64,000 nucleotides of DNA, taken from assembly GCA_964036045.1 (NCBI GenBank), contig OZ038378.1, forward strand, positions 170,624,001-170,688,000. Direction: 5' to 3'. The position numbers and the translations under genes are program-made. The notes under the pieces are model-generated. The model had not been told where the DNA came from. It saw nothing but the letters and a program-made list of their open reading frames with translations, and ran no database searches. Positions 23,824-51,305 of the stretch are shown in pieces (within the stretch, counting starts at the first letter, position 1; each line of letters starts with the position of its first letter). This DNA is from Eutreptiella sp. 'Long Island Sound 2002' (lineage: Eukaryota; Protista; Euglenida).

Positions 23824-23984
23824 GTGCACGGGTTCACGTGTCCGCGTGCCTTTGTTGTCCAGACCGGGTACCTTGTGGTTCTTGTTTCCCTCAATTTGTC
23901 TGCATGCATGCGTGCATGGGGTGTGTGTGTTTGTGTGTGTGTGAGTGTCTGTGTGTCTGTGTGTCTGTGTGTCTCTGTGTGTGG

Positions 23985-24017
<33 letters not shown>

Positions 24018-24021
24018 TGCA

Positions 24022-24093
<72 letters not shown>

Positions 24094-24140
24094 TGTCTCC
24101 ATACACATACATAGCACTCTTGTGTTCCCTGTCACATCAG

Positions 24141-24277
24141 AAAGGCGCCTAGCCTTCAAACAACCATGACTGCTTTGTTTTGATTGGCCTGACGAGTTGT
24201 TTACGACCAGTGCCCTGCCCTGCCTGCCTGTCGATCCGCAGTGGGTTGGTTGCTTGGTTATTTGGTCACCTCACGCC
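24141..24277 (+). mobile_element. Short non-coding element directly preceded by a splice-acceptor-like CAG (unprocessed form)
   Basis: Pyrimidine-rich CTCTTGTGTTCCCTGTCACATCAG|AAAGGCGCCTAGCC. Shares AAAGGCGCCTAGCC, GGCCTGACGAG, AGTGCCCTG and CAGTGGGTT with 25008-25124. Confidence 0.7.
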
Positions 24278-24882
24278 GTGCGTGTGTCTGTGTAATTGTG
24301 TGTGTGTGTGTGCACGCGCGCACGCTCATCGGTGCCCTATTACCAGACTGGCAGTGGCCACAATGTTGTACCAATGGGAACTGGTAAACGGGGCTTGGGC
24401 CCTGAAACCTGAACCCCAAGGACCAACCGTCATCATTCCCTCGTGGGCCAGGCAGACCCTGCCCGCCCCTTGGGTTGTGGGGGGAGACCCCCTGCCGCTC
24501 GACCTGTTGGTGGAGCTGCAGCTCACGCAGCACCCGGGTCATTGTATGCGGTCATGGGGCCCGCTGAGGCCTTGAGTAGGGTGGCCCTTGCCCTGGCATG
24601 GGCATGCCCATGACCTGGCGGATGTAGTGCACCCCCAGACCCTCCAGTTGTGCCTATGGCGGGGGCATTCAGTCAATGAGAACAGACCATTGGTCTCAGG
24701 TGTGCCAGATCCATATAGGCCTGCTGTGTGGCCGGAGTGGCCACGGCAGCTGCCAGCTGATCCAACACCCTGGGGACCCAGAGCTGCTGGCAGTTGCCAA
24801 CTACACATCCCCTATCCTCTGGAGCATCTGTTCCAGAGGAGAGTATTTCACCTTCGCATTTCTGTTTTGGTCGCAACAGTGT

Positions 24883-24944
<62 letters not shown>

Positions 24945-24953
24945 GTGCATGCA

Positions 24954-24983
<30 letters not shown>

Positions 24984-24984
<1 letters not shown>

Positions 24985-25122
24985 TTCTGAGTGTCTATTT
25001 TTTTTCGAAAGGCGCCTAGCCTCAATGACACTATTTTCTGTTGTGGCCTGACGAGCTGTTTTGACAAGTGCCCTGTTTGCCTGCTATCGACAGTGGGTTC
25101 GGGTTTCTTGATCTCCTTCACA

Positions 25123-25124
<2 letters not shown>
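24984..25124 (+). mobile_element. SL-capped processed copy of the same short element, embedded in (TG)n
   Basis: TTTCTGAGTGTCTATTTTTTTTCG (24984-25007) matches the euglenid SL exon as recalled. It is joined to AAAGGCGCCTAGCC, not to the GT of an SL RNA intron. (TG)n lies on both sides. Confidence 0.85.
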
Positions 25125-25189
<65 letters not shown>

Positions 25190-25300: not shown

Positions 25301-27336
25301 CCTGTTCGTCTTGCTTCGATCATGTGGGTGGGTGGGTGGGTGTAGTTGTGGGTGGGCGTGGTTGTGGACGTGCTGAAGGAATGTGTAGATTGAGATCCAG
25401 AGGAACTTTGACCGGGCTTGCGCCCTGAACCTGAACCCTTAGCTGCTGCTGCATCTGTGCTCCAACACACAGCACCTCATTGGGCTGCGTGCACCTGCTT
25501 GCAGCCCCAAAGCAGCCGTGTGCACTGGAGCGCAGCTGCTGGCAGCGCCAATGCAGCTCCACATCCGGGCTCCAAAGTAGCAAAGCCAGTGAACAATACA
25601 TGACTGGTTTTAGACCGATGTCCTGTGGTGGCAGCGGGCGCTCAAGGGTTGGCTGGTCCACCAATACTACATGTCCATAGTCATTGGAGTCTGGGTGGCC
25701 AAAATGACAAAAGAAGTCGTAGTGCACATCAAGATCATGCCCACATTGGAGACCATGATGGACACCCTAGGGTGGACGCTAGCCCTACTGTTCTGCCTTC
25801 CCCACGTCATGCACCTCCATCGCCCACTGGTGGCCCTACCGGATATACAGGTGTAGATTGAATGCCCCATAAGCTCAGACCACACACAGATGGTGAAGAC
25901 ATGATGCCTAGTTGATCAAGGGTACTGGTTTGGTTTCATCAACAAGCAACGTGTGTTGCAGTCAACCGCCTGTCTGCTGGGTTAGACAGCTATTGGTGGG
26001 CATAACCGCCTAAATCACCGGCGGGTGACAAACCTGCACGCACATTTGTATCTGTGTGCTCATGTGCGTGCACACAAGTACATCCCCCTACCAGAAAAAC
26101 ACACAAACACACAGGTGCATGCAACCACAGGTGCTGGTAACAGCAATGCAGCTCCCTGTGAACTGGAGCAAAGGTGCATGCAGTGCTGTATAACAGAGCA
26201 GAGGTGCATGCTGCCATCCCCTATGTCCAGGTGCTGCACTAGGGCTGCATGCACCTGTGCTCAGTTGTTGAGTGCTGCCTTGGGACTGCCAGCACCTGTG
26301 CTCCAACACGCGGTGCTGCATTGGCACTGCATGCACCTGTGACTGGGCCCACAGTGTCCCTCATGTGGCGAGCTCCATTGGGACACAGAAATCACCAAGG
26401 TGGTGGTAGCCTAGGGCTAGCATGCACTGCAAGGGGCATGCTCATGTGTATGATATTGCCGTAAGGGCTACAATAGGTGGTGATCACCAGCAGTGCGGGA
26501 GCCGCTACCGCCCTTTGTCCCAGCTTTGGCCACCGTACCAGTTATGGGCACATGCCTATGCAATTTACCTACCTGGTCAACCACAGTTTGTATGGTGCAC
26601 ACACTACGCATGGGCAATTGGGCTCATGGGTGTCATGGCTCAGTGACAAGACAGCCGGGTAGCATCCCTTTACTGCTTGGTGTGTCTCCAAGTAGGCATC
26701 CCGAAAGTGGCTCTTGGCCCATGCCCCTTGCTGCACCCATTCATGGATGGTGGCAACATACCACAAGTGTACTGACTGGATCAGTCCTTGGCAACAATGC
26801 CTCCACAGTCCCAAATGGGGTGAAGACTAGCCAGCCCAAGGTGTGCGCTACAGCATTGGTGATATTAGGCCAACTAGTGTTTCAAGTAGGGGAGAGTAGC
26901 TGTGGCTCCCATGTGCGTTGGGGGATTCCCAATTACTGTACTAGGGTAGGGGCCGAGAGGGAGGGCGTACAAGTACCCCTCTGTGTGAGTGAGGAGGTGT
27001 TCCTCCATGCCCAGCCCTATGTGGGCTCCCACATCAGGGTGGACCTCGTGGGCAATGACTTCAAAATACTTGGCCCTATCACAATCCACCATGCGGCACG
27101 GCAACCATCATGTGCATCGTGCTGACCACCTCGTGGAGCAAGATGCCCCGCATGCCCCCCACCAAGTATGCCCCCCCCCGCCCATGCCTGAAGGCAAATT
27201 TCCGTCATGGTGCCTGCCCGCAAATTTCCGTCATGTAGAAGGCTATCAGCTCAAGTGTTGAGGACACCATTTTGCCTTTCAGGTTTGGCTCTTGCACAAA
27301 CTAGTCAGGTTGTTTGAGCAGCAAGGTGACCCGCCC

Positions 27337-31035: not shown

Positions 31036-32445
31036 TGACCAGACATACAAATAGATGTTGTTGCCGTCCGGCATGCCCCGTTTTCAAAACTGCTTGCGTC
31101 ACCACTGCCCAAACATGTTTCCCTATCTGGACATTGAAACAACCCCCCCCCCTCAACCCCCAAACTTGGTGGCGCACAAAGCAGAATTCCTTTTTTCTTT
31201 TTTCCTACTTTTGGCAGGTCACCGCTCCGCCCCCGCCCCCCTTTTGAAAAGGGCGGCGCGACTAACCCCTGGGATGCCAGTGGGGATGAGCGACACACGG
31301 ATTTAGGTGGCCTGTCCGGGGCATGGTCGACGGTCGCTTTTCCTCAAAACGAACTGACATTTTTTTTTTGTTTAGTGCTTCGCCATTATCTTTGTTGCTG
31401 CCGTTGCTGCCGTTGCTCGTTGTGAATCCTAGTTGGGGATGAGGTTTGGGACAGAAGTCACTTCTCTTTCTAGCACACCATGCCTGAGGCGGGGCCCGAT
31501 GGTGGCGCACACACCCCGGAGCTCTAGTACGAATGCCGGGGTCCCGGACCAGCAGAGCCGCCAGAGTGGCAGGGCACCGGGGCTGTCGTGGGTGGCCCAT
31601 CTGGCAATTGGAGGAGGCCCCCCCAACCACTCGCCCGTCTCATCATGCCGCCGCATGCAGGGCCCAGTAACCAGTAGGTAAGCAAGCCATCCCCCATGCA
31701 CACAACTGCTTTGCCTCTCCACTCCTCCTGTCTATGAATGTTTTTGCTCGGCACCTCTTAGGGGGACAACGGCGGAATATGTTTTCAATCTGTCAGAACC
31801 ATTGCCTTTTTTGCCTTCGTCCCCGGCGTCTCCCCTCTCATTAGAGTGGGGGGATCTGCCGGAGTTGCTGCGAAATGGCGATTAGGGCGACCAGTCACCG
31901 TGGGACTCTGACGCCGCCAAGAGCCTCACACAGCTGGCTTCGCCTCAACCACCAATGCTCACCCCCCGCCCACACCGCCCACACCAGCATCCCCCCAGCA
32001 CCATCCTACGCTCCATCCTCACACCAAAATCCCCCATCACTACCCTACGTGAGCCCCCCGCCAAAGATCCTCCCAATCCAACAAGAAACCCCCCCCCCCC
32101 TCGCCAGGGCAACTGACTCCATCACCCCAAGGACTAAGCAATGGCTGGCACAGCCCCTAGCAACACTGGATGGCCTGTTCAATCTCGGGTGGACGCAGTA
32201 CCAATTTGCCTTGCTGAGGCGGGGCCAACTAGCTTTGTGGCAAGGTGGATAGCGCGTGTCTAGGTCTCATTTCCTCGACCGAAGCCTAGAGAGGGCGAGG
32301 CTCATCCTGGCGCAGACAGTACCCCGTCCACAACGCCCTGCCGTCCCCAAATCCCCTCTAGGAAGGCCACCCTTGCCGTGTTTGGAGACCAGTGCCATGT
32401 GATTGCCTGCCCTGCTGTGCATCATCCACACCGGGTTTCTTGTTG

Positions 32446-32449
<4 letters not shown>

Positions 32450-32625: not shown

Positions 32626-32780
32626 TTTCTGAGTGTCTGCTGCTGCTTTTTTCAAAAGGAGCCCAGCCTAATGACAACATGTCACGATCATTGATTTGAT
32701 TGTCTTGTCTTCTCTTTGGCCTGGCGAGGTGTTCGTTGGGACTGACAGACTAGGGCTCGTTGTGCTGCTCGCGTGCTCCT
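32626..32780 (+). mobile_element. Older, degenerate SL-capped copy of the short element
   Basis: After (TG)n: TTTCTGAGTGTCT + GCTGCTGC + TTTTTTC + A|AAAGGAGCCCAGCC ... GGCCTGGCGAG. Confidence 0.65.
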
Positions 32781-47009: not shown

Positions 47010-47571
47010 ACGCACAGAGGTTTCGGCCTAGGCGAGGCCCTTAGATGCGACCCCAGTGGGCGCCAGACAAGACAACGGATAGGTTCCGTGCGCGCTGGCC
47101 TGATTTTTGATGGCGCCCCAGGCAACCACGGGGCCCTTGGACCCATGCGGGTCTCCCTCTTTAATATTGTTCTTTCCCTTGGGTATCACACACACACACA
47201 CACACACAAGCGAAAGGTAAGCAGCCAGTCAGGCACCATGATATATGGGAGGACATATACCAACTGTTGCAAGGCAGGGCTGCGCTAGTGTCCGTCACCC
47301 ATACCCATGTGTATGGACACAATAAATTGAAATGTAGCGACGCAGTAGATGCTCTAGCCATGGTTGGGGCAACTAAGTCCACGGTACACAAAACGGTACA
47401 GCCTGGGGGGCGGACGGAAGACGAGCTGGGGGCTAGGAGGCAAAAGCACACAAGAACAAGAGGGGTAAAGAGGCAGGCAACAGTGCAAGTCTCAGACAGT
47501 GACTCAAGGAGTGACAGGCATGAACAGAGCATGGATTCAATCACCCCCAAGGTGGGGCAATTGGCAATTGG

Positions 47572-47575
<4 letters not shown>
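47010..47575 (+). mobile_element. 3' fragment of a different, possibly RNase H-bearing LINE (family F)
   Basis: HVYGHNKLKCSDAVDALAMVGA resembles the RNase H C-terminal motif (H-x-x-GH..N-x-x-AD-x-LA..GA). The RRQK..RGVKR tail is shared with 46540-46620. Ends at (CA)n. Confidence 0.45.
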
Positions 47576-47602
<27 letters not shown>

Positions 47603-47606
47603 GCAC

Positions 47607-47647
<41 letters not shown>

Positions 47648-47650
<3 letters not shown>

Positions 47651-48807
47651 GAGAGAGGCCGGGTCTTACGACTGGCAATGGCAAATGCGCAGCGCCTGGT
47701 CACCAAAGGCCACTTGCATCCAGCGCGTGTGGTCACACGCTGCAGCTCTTTAGTTCCTTTGGGGGGGCCGGCACTCTGCGGCCTGAACTGCCGCCCCTAT
47801 TTCACCTGCCGCAGTGCCATGAACATGCACGTTCAGCAGTTAGCGGCATACTGTGAGCGCACGTGGGCCACCAAGGTTGGTCTCAACAGAATACACAAAC
47901 TGCGCCCGTACACACATAGGCCACGCAGAACAGCGCAGGAAGTGGAGGAGCATCGACTACAGCGTGCACTCCAGGGGAATCTGCAGTTGGGGCTGGCTCC
48001 GTCCTCGGAGCAGACCAATTTTGCCAAAGGGGGGGGGGGGGGCTGCTCCTCCTTTGCAGCTGATTTCTTCCCTGTGATAGGGGATGGGAAGCTCCCACAG
48101 CGCCCCTACACCGGGACACGCAGGCGCGCAAACACACACAGGGCGCCACCACCGGCGCCGCCGGCTGATCCGTCAAAGTGTGCCCAGCACTCTGCTGACG
48201 CATGCACGACCTGCAAGAGACTTCGGCGCACAGCTGAAGCATGCTGTGCGCTGGGGCATCACGCTGATGACCACATAGCACGCAGACCGCAACTGCAACT
48301 GTGCCCACTGCATGGCCTGCCACCGTGCCCGAGGTGCACACTCAAGCAAAGGGGAGTGCGCCACTGCTGTCAGCGGGGACACCATAAAGTGTGCACCCCA
48401 GTGCCTGCGCGCCGGAAGCGCCCACTTGCTGCACATGCACAACTGCCCCACAAACGACCACGCCTGCAAGGGCCTGCACGTATCTCTACGGGTCTGCTGA
48501 GGTCCCCACACCAACCCCCCACCCCTCCAGCCCCCAAACGCAGGAGGCCGAAAACACCCCCCCCTCCGTCCCCACCAGCCCCAGTTCCACGGGGGCTGGA
48601 GGAGACCGTGGCCGAGGATGTCGCCCGCCCGCTTTTCGTGACGAGGCACGGGAGAGCGAACACTTTGGATACCTAGCCAGCAAAATACAGAGGTTCTGAT
48701 TCCGCAGAAGGGAGGGAAACAACGTCACAAAGAGGCCTCAGCAGACCTGAGCCAAATGAGGCGTCCAGCCCAACGCTGCACAAGGGTCCACCTCTAAAAG
48801 TACAGAT
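47648..48807 (+). mobile_element. 5'-truncated LINE copy (subfamily D, copy 2)
   Basis: Near-identical to about 2845-3999, with a different 5' breakpoint and the same 3' end; (CA)n on both sides. Confidence 0.88.
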
Positions 48808-48811
48808 CACA

Positions 48812-48848
<37 letters not shown>

Positions 48849-48850
<2 letters not shown>

Positions 48851-49340
48851 GGATCCCCGGCTCACTCAACCGGGCTAAGCGTAGGTCTCGCAACGGTAAG
48901 GTCGTGGGTTCGATCCCCGGAGCAGGCATATCTGGAGGCGGGCGGCGGCAGCCGTGCGTCAAGGGCATCCTTTCTGGCGAAATCGCCAAATGAGTAGGCT
49001 GTGGAGGCCGCCTCGCTGCCGCGAGCACCACCAGCTGTGGAAGCTCCAAGACACATACAACACACGGGGCAACATGGCGATGACGGGCTCGTCGAACTCA
49101 TGCCGTGGAGCTGGCCCGGCGGAAGCCACGGAGCCACCACCCCACTTCCAGGGTGGTCCTCGGGCAGCGAGCCAGGGTCTGGCCCAAGTGCATATCGCAC
49201 TGGTCGAGGGGTAACACAGGGACGCACTCACACCCCTGGCCTGCACCGTGGGCGTGCTATGATGGGGTAAGCGACCCGACCCGAGGACGCCAGTGTGGCC
49301 TATACGGGCTCAACCGGGAGACCTGGTAAAAATGGTACAA

Positions 49341-49342
<2 letters not shown>
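48849..49342 (+). mobile_element. tRNA-derived SINE-like element between (CA)n tracts
   Basis: Head 48858-48926 has A-box-like CTCAACCGGGCTAAGCG, loop CT-CGC-AA with a broken stem, and B-box GGTTCGATCCC. A ~410-nt body ends GGTACAAT|(CA)n. Confidence 0.65.
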
Positions 49343-49726
<384 letters not shown>

Positions 49727-51305
49727 TGGGTGGCGCTCGTCGTCGTCGGGGGTTCGAGCCCCGGTTCGTCCGTCCGTCCAAGGGCCCGTTGGCGAGGTCC
49801 CCGCCACCGCCCCCTTCAACATCCCCCTCCACCACCGGTACCGCTGATGGATGGGTGGCGTGTCTCGTCCTCGTAGTTTTTACTTTTGTTATTACCCAGT
49901 CCAGACCTCAGAGCATGCAGAAAAACAAGGCACCAAGCACAGCACACCTGCAGCAGTGCCCCCTGTCACCGGTACCGCTGGCCGACGGGAGTCGCATCTC
50001 CTCCTCGTATTCCCCTTGGGGGATTTGAACCGGCGTCTCGAGGGCAGCAGCCGGCCAAAGCCAGTATTATGAGCCGCTGGCCCCAGCAGGCCAATGTTTT
50101 CGTATGGTCATGAGTTCAGTAGAGGCAAGCAGGTCACATAGAACCAGGCGCCGCCTCACCCCCCTTTCACCCCCTCCCAGCACGTGAGCTCCAGCGGCAC
50201 CCGTGGGTTTCTCACCCGTGCGTCCGCCAACAGCACACCGGACTCGCCCAGTGGGGCCTCCGAGCAGGGAAGCACAGGAGCACGGACCAGGGATGCGGGA
50301 TGCGGTAGGAGCACAAGCCCCACTCCCTCTTGTTGCATGTTGCGTGTCATCTCAACCCAGTTCCAGAAGCCCGGCGACAGGGCAACAGAACAACAGCACT
50401 CATGGTTTGGTCGTATCATTGTTGAACCTCGCAGTTTGAGCATGATTTGAAAGAATTGGGCGTCACACACACACACACACACACACAGACACACACACAC
50501 ACGTGCTTGTGTTTTGTTCTTGCATGTGGTAGCACTGCCATGTACCCACTGCGAACGGAACTTTTGAATGAGCACGCTCACTTTGTTGATTTTTTGCCCG
50601 TTTTGCCCGTGGTGCCTTGTCTTTGTGCCCGTTTGCGGTGCTTACTTCACCTAAAATTCATAAAAATTCAAACGACGTGAATTGTAGCTTGAATTGGTCA
50701 TCATGTAGCTTAAATTCACAAAAAAAAACTTGAATTCGCGTTTGAATTCGCAACCTCGTGCGCAATCGTATTCGCATCTGTATCCGCATTCACATTCGCG
50801 CGCACTTGGCGCGAAGTTCGCGCAAAGTTCGCGTAAATTTGGCCCAAATTCGCATTCGCAAGGGTCGCAGCAGACACAAGCGAACGGCACAATACGAATA
50901 GGGCATTAAACGGCCACCATGGCCACCCAGTGTGTGGAAAAGGGGTGGTTTTTTCTCGCAGGGACCTGTATTTTAATTTTTTTAGAATTTTTGAAACCAT
51001 ATCCTCCGTTCCAACCCATTGAAAAGGGCCTTTTTTTTGGACAAAATAGTTGTTTTGGACACCCATATTCGCATTCTCATTCAAAAGTTCCCGAAACGGC
51101 CATTCGCAAAGGGTACACACTGCTCTCCCCTGAGTACCAAAGACATCACCAGAGGTGTTACTTCCCCCCCAAGGGCGCGCCCCTAGGGACACAAAACCCC
51201 GAGGCCCCCTGGCCTCCAATTCATTAGGTCCACAACGGCTCATTGACGTTTCACCCCCCGGCCCTCCGGCGGCCCCTAATGTAAGTCCCCCCCGGACGAC
51301 ACAAC

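What the first reader, a model, noticed from the sequence alone, without database searches (positions are those of the whole stretch)
24117..25124. The same short element occurs both behind a splice acceptor and capped with the spliced leader
Seen: at 24141 the sequence AAAGGCGCCTAGCC follows a pyrimidine tract and CAG. At 25008 the same 14-mer follows TTTCTGAGTGTCTATTTTTTTTCG, and the downstream blocks are homologous. Established: this 24-mer matches the euglenid SL exon, which is added at AG acceptors by trans-splicing, and true SL RNA genes continue with GT. Inference: the second copy is the cDNA of a trans-spliced transcript of an element like the first. That would be a non-coding retroposon family processed by SL trans-splicing and then reinserted. 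SL relics are documented in dinoflagellates; I do not know of a described SL-capped retroposon family in euglenids.
Basis: partly seen in the sequence, partly recalled or inferred. Interest (0 to 1): 0.9.

Follow-up and report, generated by a model that had tools for sequence, protein, structure and literature searches.

The report
Spliced-leader-tagged copies of a jumping gene's tail
In this Euglena genome the last ~120-150 letters of a Penelope-like jumping gene sit just behind a trans-splice site. Hundreds of genomic copies of that tail begin with the cell's own spliced leader, so trans-spliced RNA fragments of the element have been copied back into DNA.

Summary
The 14-mer AAAGGCGCCTAGCC lies at 24141 behind a pyrimidine tract plus CAG, and at 25008 behind an exact 24-nt Euglena gracilis spliced leader (SL).

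The 14-mer is not the head of a free-standing non-coding retroposon. It starts the ~100-170-nt 3'-terminal module of a Penelope-like element (PLE) that encodes an N-terminal GIY-YIG endonuclease, a CxC motif and a telomerase-like reverse transcriptase.

- **Genome counts:** 1621 copies of the 14-mer; 1298 follow AG, and 146 follow the SL's last letters (TTCG).
- **Copy 1 (24114-24277):** a 5'-truncated PLE insertion that keeps 27 nt of 3'UTR with the acceptor.
- **Copy 2 (24984-25124):** a retrocopy of SL-trans-spliced module RNA from a different lineage (69% identical to copy 1), inserted in a (TG)n microsatellite.
- **Decisive test:** lineages whose AG lies 0, 2 or 3 nt before the core give SL copies carrying exactly those 0, 2 (CG) or 3 (ACC) extra letters. 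For two lineages the counts are 146 and 22 matched against 0 and 0 swapped.

The module has a hammerhead-like core: GAAA, a palindrome, UA, a covarying helix I and CUGANGA. It lacks helix II, and the SL does not supply one in these two copies.

The scan noted this same family elsewhere in the genome (s1-212981, s1-213003). I found no paper describing it.

The parts
23920..24095 (.). (TG)n/(GTGC)n microsatellite 5' of copy 1. Presumed insertion target.
   Evidence: A microsatellite of the tail's type lies at variable distance upstream of AG-type copies.
24114..24140 (+). Remnant of the PLE 3'UTR: pyrimidine-rich tract ending in the CAG trans-splice acceptor (24138-24140).
   Evidence: Homology to L004, which has the PLE ORF upstream, starts at -27. 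Pyrimidine fraction at -28..-4 is 0.69 in 25 AG-type copies against 0.50 further upstream.
24141..24277 (+). Copy 1: 3'-terminal module of a 5'-truncated PLE insertion.
   Evidence: 93% identical to L004 (acceptor-type, PLE ORF upstream) and 96% to L038 (SL-type). nhmmer E = 1e-37.
24141..24151 (+). (G)AAA, the palindrome within AGGCGCCT, and UA. This is the hammerhead-like GAAA strand, helix III palindrome and UH site. The G comes from the AG acceptor or from the SL's last G.
   Evidence: The palindrome covaries to AGACGTCT in another lineage.
24152..24188 (+). Helix I: GCC...GGC closing an internally paired loop.
   Evidence: Covariation over 46 distinct helix ends: 76% paired against 49% with shuffled partners and 36% or 27% when slid.
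24189..24195 (+). CTGACGA, matching the CUGANGA core strand.
24278..24325 (.). Degenerate (TG)n tail of copy 1.
   Evidence: 24 of 26 AG-type and 26 of 30 SL-type copies have a run of (TG)n, (G)n or (GTGC)n after the module, for most 92-178 nt from its start.
24880..24983 (.). (TG)n directly abutting the SL of copy 2. Target microsatellite.
   Evidence: In 29 of 30 SL-type copies a (TG)n or (G)n run ends 13-36 nt before AAAGG, consistent with the SL's 5' end.
24984..25007 (+). Spliced-leader exon lacking its first letters (AC/ACAC), encoded in DNA.
   Evidence: Other copies start at ACACTTTC, ACTTTC or CTTTC.
25008..25124 (+). Copy 2: retrocopy of the trans-spliced 3' module. UA at 25017-25018, helix I at 25019-25047, CTGACGA at 25048-25054.
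   Evidence: 97% identical to SL-type L057 and 93% to acceptor-type L012, which has the PLE ORF upstream. No PLE coding similarity anywhere in the window.
25125..25186 (.). (TG)n tail of copy 2.
32626..32760 (+). Third, decayed SL-type copy: (TG)n, then an SL with an insertion, then AAAGGAGCCCAGCC and GGCCTGGCGAG.

Best explanation
The 14-mer marks the start of the 3'-terminal RNA module of a large, diverse family of Penelope-like retrotransposons in Euglena gracilis. The elements encode an N-terminal GIY-YIG endonuclease, a CxC motif and a telomerase-like RT, which makes them Chlamys/Naiad-like. They insert into (TG)n or (G)n microsatellites and are often 5'-truncated.

A pyrimidine tract plus AG sits 0-3 nt upstream of the module in every lineage seen. 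Element transcripts are SL-trans-spliced at this AG. That yields a short SL-headed RNA which still carries the 3' module and the (UG)n or (G)n end used by the element's reverse transcriptase. This RNA is occasionally reverse-transcribed into another microsatellite.

Copy 1 in the window is a 5'-truncated element that kept the acceptor. Copy 2 is such an SL-headed retrocopy, from another lineage.

Shown: the family structure, the counts, the lineage-matched junctions and the microsatellite flanks. Inferred: mobilisation in trans by the PLE enzyme, and any benefit of the acceptor to the element.
For: - **PLE identity.** An 874-aa ORF ends ~217 nt upstream of CAG|AAAGGCGCC in L061. It has GIY-YIG at aa 15-53 (23.1 bits, cutoff 22.6), no cysteine in the endonuclease domain, and a PCTCH CxC motif. 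The predicted fold of its central 341 aa best matches telomerase RTs (E = 2e-7), then group II intron RTs.
- **Same layout in a distant lineage.** A 67%-identical lineage is organised the same way.
- **Acceptor-type copies are PLE insertions.** 13 of 32 oriented loci have PLE coding similarity upstream of the AG; none of the 4 SL-type loci do. The genome holds intact ORFs 97-100% identical to each other, and many copies truncated at variable 5' points with intact 3' ends.
- **Counts.** 14-mer 1621; AG + 14-mer 1298; TTCG + 14-mer 146.
- **Lineage-matched junctions.** The TAGCC lineage (AG|AAAGG) gives SL+AAAGG 146 times and SL+CG+AAAGG 0 times. The TATGA lineage (AG|CGAAAGG, 324 copies) gives SL+CG+AAAGG 22 times and SL+AAAGG 0 times. 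A third lineage, CAG|ACCGAAAGACGTC, has the SL-type copy SL+ACC+GAAAGACGTC.
- **Flanks.** In 29 of 30 SL-type copies (TG)n or (G)n ends 13-36 nt before AAAGG, consistent with the SL's 5' end. In the four (G)n-flanked SL-type copies that also have a tail run (L011, L033, L053, L059) the tail contains (G)n. The same (CA)n and (C)n bias is published for Chlamys PLEs (PMC8557442).
- **No poly(A).** The tail is a microsatellite run in the copies fetched, never poly(A).
- **RNA.** In an RNA library, an 85-nt contig consists of 23 nt of SL plus 62 nt identical to copy 1. Another contig is unspliced.
Against: - There is no unambiguous RNA proof. The junction contig comes from an estuary metatranscriptome kept as contigs, and it could derive from read-through of a genomic SL-type copy such as L038, which is identical over those 62 nt.
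- Microsatellite targets hide target-site duplications.
- Trans-mobilisation by the PLE enzyme is inferred, not shown.
- SL-type copies of one lineage are often closest to each other (97-99%). Some may therefore come from a few sources, or propagate on their own; sampling was uneven.
Confidence: 0.85

Rival explanations
1. One reading: an independent, non-coding SINE-like family. Its acceptor-type copies are the source genes, and SL-capped cDNAs are its normal mode of spread.
For: The short copies contain no ORF. SL-type copies of one lineage are 97-99% alike, as a self-propagating short lineage would be. 223 SL-type copies exist.
Against: Acceptor-type copies continue upstream into a PLE 3'UTR and ORF, or stop at variable truncation points. 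SL-type copies make up only 9% of 14-mer copies. They have lost the AG and carry no recognisable promoter; no tRNA gene or Rfam match was found around the two window copies. They should therefore be poor sources.
Confidence: 0.1
2. The acceptor is placed so that the spliced leader supplies the missing helix II strand. Trans-splicing would then switch on a hammerhead ribozyme in the module. The scan raised this idea for the same family elsewhere.
For: - The core elements GAAA, palindromic helix III, UA, a covarying helix I and CUGANGA are present.
- The AG lies 0-3 nt before GAAA in three lineages.
- The SL's terminal CG gives the canonical C-GAAA where the unspliced RNA has A-GAAA.
- 3 of 60 copies (L026, L034, L057+1902) have 7-8 nt complementary to SL nt 6-13 after the core.
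Against: - For both window copies the arm after CUGACGA pairs with the SL's 3' end for only 1 bp. Its best match anywhere in the SL is 3-4 nt, the same as a reversed-SL control.
- Across 60 copies the maximum is 4 bp.
- Genome-wide, an anti-U-tract arm after the core is absent: 0 hits for GAAAAA, and 3 for six purines against 1 in the control.
- No Rfam hammerhead model matches any lineage, even at E <= 10.
Confidence: 0.1
3. The SL head was added during reverse transcription, by template switching onto SL RNA or another capped mRNA, or by DNA recombination with SL genes. Trans-splicing of the element RNA was not involved.
For: Reverse transcriptases do switch templates at RNA 5' ends. One copy (L050) has a partial extra SL piece.
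Against: The junction always lies at the lineage's own AG, with lineage-specific 0, 2 or 3 extra letters (146 and 22 matched against 0 and 0 swapped). The SL ends at its exon boundary ...TTTTCG and never runs on into SL-RNA intron sequence.
Confidence: 0.03

Closest known systems
N-terminal-endonuclease Penelope-like elements (Chlamys/Naiad; Craig et al. 2021, PMC8557442)
   Same: N-terminal GIY-YIG, CxC linker and TERT-like RT. Chlamys-like absence of cysteines in the endonuclease domain. Strong insertion bias for (CA)n and (C)n microsatellites. 5'-truncated and head-to-tail copies. Only 'half-core' hammerhead-like motifs instead of canonical ones.
   Different: Not reported from euglenids in the papers I could search. 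No trans-splice acceptor or SL-headed copies are described for any PLE.
Non-autonomous PLE derivatives: MRC1 in Chlamydomonas (PMC8557442) and animal non-LTR retrozymes (bioRxiv 10.64898/2026.07.22.740005)
   Same: Short non-coding copies that share the autonomous element's 3' or pLTR region and are presumably mobilised by its enzyme.
   Different: Here the short form is generated afresh by host SL trans-splicing of the element's own transcript. It is marked by the SL, rather than arising by deletion or as ribozyme-processed tandem or circular RNAs.
SL-relic retrogenes of dinoflagellates (PMC6050394, PMC5585692)
   Same: A spliced leader encoded in DNA at the 5' end of a retrocopy is the signature of reverse transcription of a mature trans-spliced RNA.
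   Different: Those are protein-coding mRNAs, often carrying stacked relic SLs. Here the copy is a ~120-150-nt non-coding fragment of a retrotransposon, without poly(A), placed in microsatellites and in a euglenid.
Hammerhead ribozymes of PLE pseudo-LTRs (Cervera & de la Pena 2014, PMC4209133; Frangieh et al. 2024, PMC11167929)
   Same: CUGANGA and GAAA cores near the element's end, with a short palindromic helix III that suggests dimers.
   Different: The order is permuted, with GAAA first. No helix II partner was found and no Rfam hit. Cleavage is untested.

Membership tests
Penelope-like element, N-terminal EN+ (Chlamys-like) | GIY-YIG endonuclease N-terminal to the RT | tested here: met
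   Pfam GIY-YIG at aa 15-53 of the 874-aa ORF (23.1 bits, cutoff 22.6). Relatives score 18-22 bits. The RT lies downstream.
Penelope-like element, N-terminal EN+ (Chlamys-like) | Telomerase-related reverse transcriptase | tested here: met
   The predicted fold (pLDDT 67, pTM 0.68) has telomerase RTs as its top 7 PDB matches (E = 2e-7 to 4e-5). RT motifs are visible in the alignment. Pfam RVT_1 scores only 14 bits.
Penelope-like element, N-terminal EN+ (Chlamys-like) | CxC motif between EN and RT; no CCHH in the EN domain (Chlamys) | tested here: met
   The two cysteines of PCTCH are invariant (C217, C219) in 8 relatives. No cysteine lies between the leading (TG)n-encoded run and aa ~210. Read by eye.
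Penelope-like element, N-terminal EN+ (Chlamys-like) | Insertion bias for (CA)n/(C)n microsatellites | tested here: met
   compared with PMC8557442.
Penelope-like element, N-terminal EN+ (Chlamys-like) | Insertion-in-fingers domain; pseudo-LTR architecture | not tested
   Head-to-tail arrays were seen (~20 copies in C1:154.85 Mb). pLTRs and the IFD were not examined.
Hammerhead ribozyme | Conserved core CUGANGA ... GAAA with a UH cleavage site | tested here: met
   (G)AAA, UA (rarely CA, AA, GA or UC) and CTGA[ACT]GA are present in 60 copies.
Hammerhead ribozyme | Helix I joining the UH site to CUGANGA | tested here: met
   46 distinct helix ends. Positions 1-3 show three (position 1) to six (position 2) standard pair types. 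76% are paired against 49% shuffled (maximum 58%) and 36% or 27% slid.
Hammerhead ribozyme | Helix III | tested here: inconclusive
   Present only as an 8-nt palindrome (AGGCGCCU), which needs a dimer or a 2-bp stem. There is one compensatory variant, AGACGUCU.
Hammerhead ribozyme | Helix II closing the three-way junction | tested here: not met
   No pairing with the copy's own upstream sequence (0 bp in 29 of 60). At most 4 bp with the SL's 3' end, and 1 bp in both window copies. Searches agree.
Hammerhead ribozyme | Match to a curated covariance model; self-cleavage | tested here: not met
   No Rfam hammerhead hit at E <= 10 in the window region or in 6 loci. Cleavage cannot be tested with these tools.
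SL-relic retrocopy | SL exon in DNA, joined to the body exactly at the parent's AG acceptor | tested here: met
   146 and 22 matched junctions against 0 and 0 swapped.
SL-relic retrocopy | Poly(A) tail and target-site duplication (LINE-type retroposition) | tested here: not met
   The tail is a microsatellite run ((TG)n, (G)n or (GTGC)n) in 26 of the 30 SL-type copies fetched, never poly(A). TSDs cannot be read in microsatellites.
Classical SINE | Pol III head derived from tRNA, 5S or 7SL | tested here: not met
   No tRNA gene and no Rfam small-RNA match. T-runs lie inside the module.

The most novel reading that the evidence does not exclude
The trans-splice acceptor may be a selected part of these retrotransposons. 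It sits 0-3 nt before a helix-II-less hammerhead-like core in at least three lineages as little as 44-67% alike in protein. If so, the host's SL machinery is built into the element's life cycle. It could separate a translatable upstream mRNA from a capped template or regulatory RNA. In some branches it could bring in an SL strand that completes or gates the ribozyme-like fold.
Probability: 0.2. Interest if true: 0.85.

Novelty: new variant of a known kind. Interest (0 to 1): 0.65.

Why it matters
Spliced-leader relics in DNA have served as a natural tag for RNA-to-DNA recycling in dinoflagellates only. Here the same tag shows, in a euglenid, that a retrotransposon's own transcript is cut by host trans-splicing, and that the resulting fragment is re-inserted hundreds of times.

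That is a new route by which short non-autonomous retroposons arise. It also extends N-terminal-endonuclease Penelope-like elements to Euglenozoa.

The acceptor sits at the edge of a hammerhead-like core, which gives a concrete system for asking what such half-ribozyme modules do in PLE transposition.

Tried and rejected
- **Rfam at E <= 10.** Searched on the window region and on six loci of three lineages. No hammerhead or other credible family.
- **SL as helix II strand.** Rejected for both window copies and for most of the family.
- **Own upstream pyrimidine tract as helix II strand.** Rejected.
- **Minimum-energy folds.** Folds of single copies gave no shared helix II.
- **RNA runs of the organism.** The three small runs labelled as possible RNA laid nothing on copy 1. 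Only an estuary metatranscriptome gave contigs, and contigs cannot show RNA ends.
- **Naming the ORF by sequence.** PDB sequence and profile searches of the ORF found nothing. The protein database returned only unnamed relatives.
- **Further genomic copies.** Later tests therefore used pattern counts only. I did not pad patterns to read flanks.
- **Target-site duplications.** Not assessable in microsatellites.
- **Complex prediction.** Not used; no protein-protein claim is made.

Full report
**Observation.**
The 14-mer AAAGGCGCCTAGCC lies at 24141 and 25008. At 24141 it follows a pyrimidine-rich stretch ending in CAG. At 25008 it follows TTTCTGAGTGTCTATTTTTTTTCG (24984-25007), which is unique in the window. 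That 24-mer is the 3' part of the E. gracilis SL primer ACACTTTCTGAGTGTCTATTTTTTTTCG used in PMC5654406. The two downstream blocks align at 69% identity.

The window is C1:170,624,001-170,688,000 of a 2.28-Gb genome. There the 14-mer occurs 1621 times, against 2 for the reversed control.

**Anatomy of the short unit.**
In 32 copies the unit runs ~100-170 nt. It has these parts, in order:
- AAAGGCGCCTA.
- A variable hairpin closed by GCC/GGC or other complementary ends.
- CTGA[ACT]GAG.
- A less conserved stretch, often containing CAGTGCC.
- A (TG)n run.

Acceptor-type and SL-type copies share this 3' end.

**What the acceptor-type copies are.**
- Upstream homology between related acceptor-type copies extends for variable lengths, from -21 to about -1490.
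- Two copies that share ~3 kb upstream (L061, L062; 67% identity) carry a long ORF that stops ~217 nt before the CAG.
- The 874-aa ORF has GIY-YIG at aa 15-53, a PCTCH CxC motif, no cysteine in the endonuclease domain, and RT motifs.
- Its central 341 aa fold like telomerase RT. The top seven PDB matches have E = 2e-7 to 4e-5, followed by group II intron RTs and R2.
- This is the N-terminal-endonuclease Penelope-like architecture (Chlamys/Naiad) of Craig et al. 2021. That paper also reports insertion bias for (CA)n and (C)n, non-autonomous derivatives sharing the 3' end, and hammerhead 'half cores'.
- 13 of 32 oriented loci show PLE coding similarity upstream of the AG. These include L004 and L012, the closest acceptor-type relatives of window copies 1 and 2. 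None of the four SL-type loci do.
- The genome holds intact ORFs 97-100% identical to one another. It also holds many copies truncated at variable points with intact C-termini, out of 8105 first-look candidates.

Acceptor-type copies are therefore full-length or 5'-truncated PLE insertions. Copy 1 keeps only 27 nt of 3'UTR (24114-24140) behind a (TG)n/(GTGC)n tract.

**What the SL-type copies are.**
SL joined to AAAGGCGCC occurs 223 times, against 0 for the control. Of the 1621 14-mers, 1298 follow AG and 146 follow TTCG.

In 29 of 30 fetched SL-type copies a (TG)n or (G)n run ends 13-36 nt before AAAGG, consistent with the SL's 5' end. The SL there begins ACACTTTC, ACTTTC, CTTTC or TTTC. That run is often the tail of another copy. 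In the four (G)n-flanked copies that also have a tail run, the tail contains (G)n. No copy has poly(A).

The decisive test is a natural one, because lineages differ in where the AG lies.

| Lineage | Parent acceptor (count) | SL joined directly to AAAGG | SL + CG + AAAGG |
|---|---|---|---|
| TAGCC | AG\|AAAGG (1298) | 146 | 0 |
| TATGA ((G)n flanks) | AG\|CGAAAGG (324) | 0 | 22 |

A third lineage, CAG|ACCGAAAGACGTC, has the SL-type copy SL+ACC+GAAAGACGTC.

The letters between the SL and the core thus follow each lineage's own acceptor. This is what trans-splicing predicts. A fixed SL prefix, template switching or recombination would not produce it.

Copy 2 is 97% identical to SL-type L057 and 93% to acceptor-type L012. 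Copy 1 is 96% identical to SL-type L038 and 93% to acceptor-type L004. Both lineages therefore have both forms, and copy 1 is not copy 2's parent.

**RNA evidence.**
Only contig-level data could be laid. In an estuary metatranscriptome, one 85-nt contig consists of 23 nt of SL followed by 62 nt identical to 24140-24201. Another contig is unspliced, reading ...CTCTACTG|CAGAAAGG.

This fits trans-splicing. It could also reflect transcription of a genomic SL-type copy, because L038 is identical over that stretch. Three small runs of the organism gave nothing.

**Hammerhead-like core.**
The module reads (G)AAA, then the 8-nt palindrome AGGCGCCU, UA, helix I and CUGANGA. That is the order of a type II hammerhead from G12 onward.
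- **Helix I is real.** 46 distinct helix ends are 76% paired over five positions. The figure is 49% with shuffled partners (maximum 58%) and 36% or 27% when slid. G-C, U-A, C-G and G-U alternatives occur.
- **The palindrome covaries.** It is AGACGUCU in another lineage.
- **Helix II is missing.**
  - The arm after the core does not pair with the copy's own upstream sequence.
  - It pairs at most 4 bp with the SL's 3' end, and 1 bp in both window copies.
  - Purine arms are absent genome-wide.
  - Only 3 of 60 copies have 7-8 nt complementary to SL nt 6-13.
- **No Rfam hammerhead model matches**.

I therefore file the module as hammerhead-like, not as a hammerhead. It is probably the structured 3' element that the PLE enzyme recognises; that is an inference. 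The scan's earlier idea, that the SL completes the ribozyme (s1-212981, s1-213003), is not supported for these two copies. It remains possible for one branch.

**Mechanism.**
- Shown: the elements insert sense-strand-(TG)n or (G)n into like microsatellites. Their transcripts carry an AG acceptor just 5' of the module. DNA copies exist that start with the SL at that AG.
- Inferred: trans-splicing releases a capped ~150-nt RNA that keeps the 3' recognition module, and the PLE enzyme reverse-transcribes it in trans.
- Open: the acceptor might help the element, for instance by coupling 3'-end formation of the ORF mRNA to downstream trans-splicing as in kinetoplastids. This is speculation.

**Comparison and novelty.**
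PLEs of this type, their microsatellite bias and their non-autonomous derivatives are known (PMC8557442; bioRxiv 10.64898/2026.07.22.740005). SL relics are known from dinoflagellates (PMC6050394, PMC5585692).

I found no paper that joins Euglena with Penelope-like elements or that describes SL-headed retroposons in euglenids. The scan itself has noted this family, and SL-tagged LINEs and retrogenes, elsewhere in this genome. It is a new variant of known kinds.

Noticed in passing
window 32626-32760: A third, decayed SL-type copy. It has (TG)n, then an SL interrupted by GCTGCTGC, then AAAGGAGCCCAGCC and GGCCTGGCGAG. It lacks a clear TG tail.
   Followed up: partly
window 32380-32447: The 3' part of a module (GTGTTTGGAGACCAGTGCC...GGGTTTCTTGTTGG), truncated inside the module and abutting a long (TC)n tract.
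   Followed up: no
window 25302-25330: After copy 2's (TG)n and a (GCCGT)n run lies a ~30-nt piece resembling the extreme 3' end of another PLE lineage (CCTGTTCGTCT...TCGATCATGTG, compare L010). It looks like a severely truncated insertion.
   Followed up: no
window 24391-24416 and 25414-25438: A shared ~25-nt motif (GGGCTTGSGCCCTGAA(A)CCTGAACCC) lies ~100-230 nt downstream of both copies. It has only these two matches in the window and none in shuffles. Origin unknown.
   Followed up: partly
window 24152-24186 (run X1): The deepest RNA-library contig (468 nt, depth 48) matches only 24152-24186. It starts exactly at the predicted cleavage site after UA, has unrelated sequence before it, and has TTCG plus Illumina adapter after it. 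It could be a coincidence, another locus sharing the loop, or a processed or ligated RNA.
   Followed up: no
window 24166-24183 and 25026-25052; most copies: An AUGAC motif recurs in the helix I loop. In SL-headed RNA it would open a tiny ORF of 5 codons in copy 1 and 8 in copy 2. Its significance is unknown.
   Followed up: no
window 47180-50510, minus strand: Several partial matches to the module's 3' part lie among CA tracts (nhmmer). They fit a train of truncated tails inserted into earlier tails, and the scan noted this train separately (s1-193114).
   Followed up: no
L050:1482-1540: A partial SL piece (GAGTGTCTAT) sits directly in front of a complete SL at the head of an SL-type copy. 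It may be an RT slip or a relic of a second round.
   Followed up: no
G000:C1:154845698-154863872: About 20 copies of the lineage with (G)n flanks lie on one strand, spaced ~700-2500 nt apart. This is a head-to-tail array.
   Followed up: no
G000:C19:28885829-28888399 and others: Open frames of 1238 aa surround the 857-aa match in several 97-98% identical copies. The full-length ORF probably has a ~360-aa N-terminal extension that is absent from L061.
   Followed up: no
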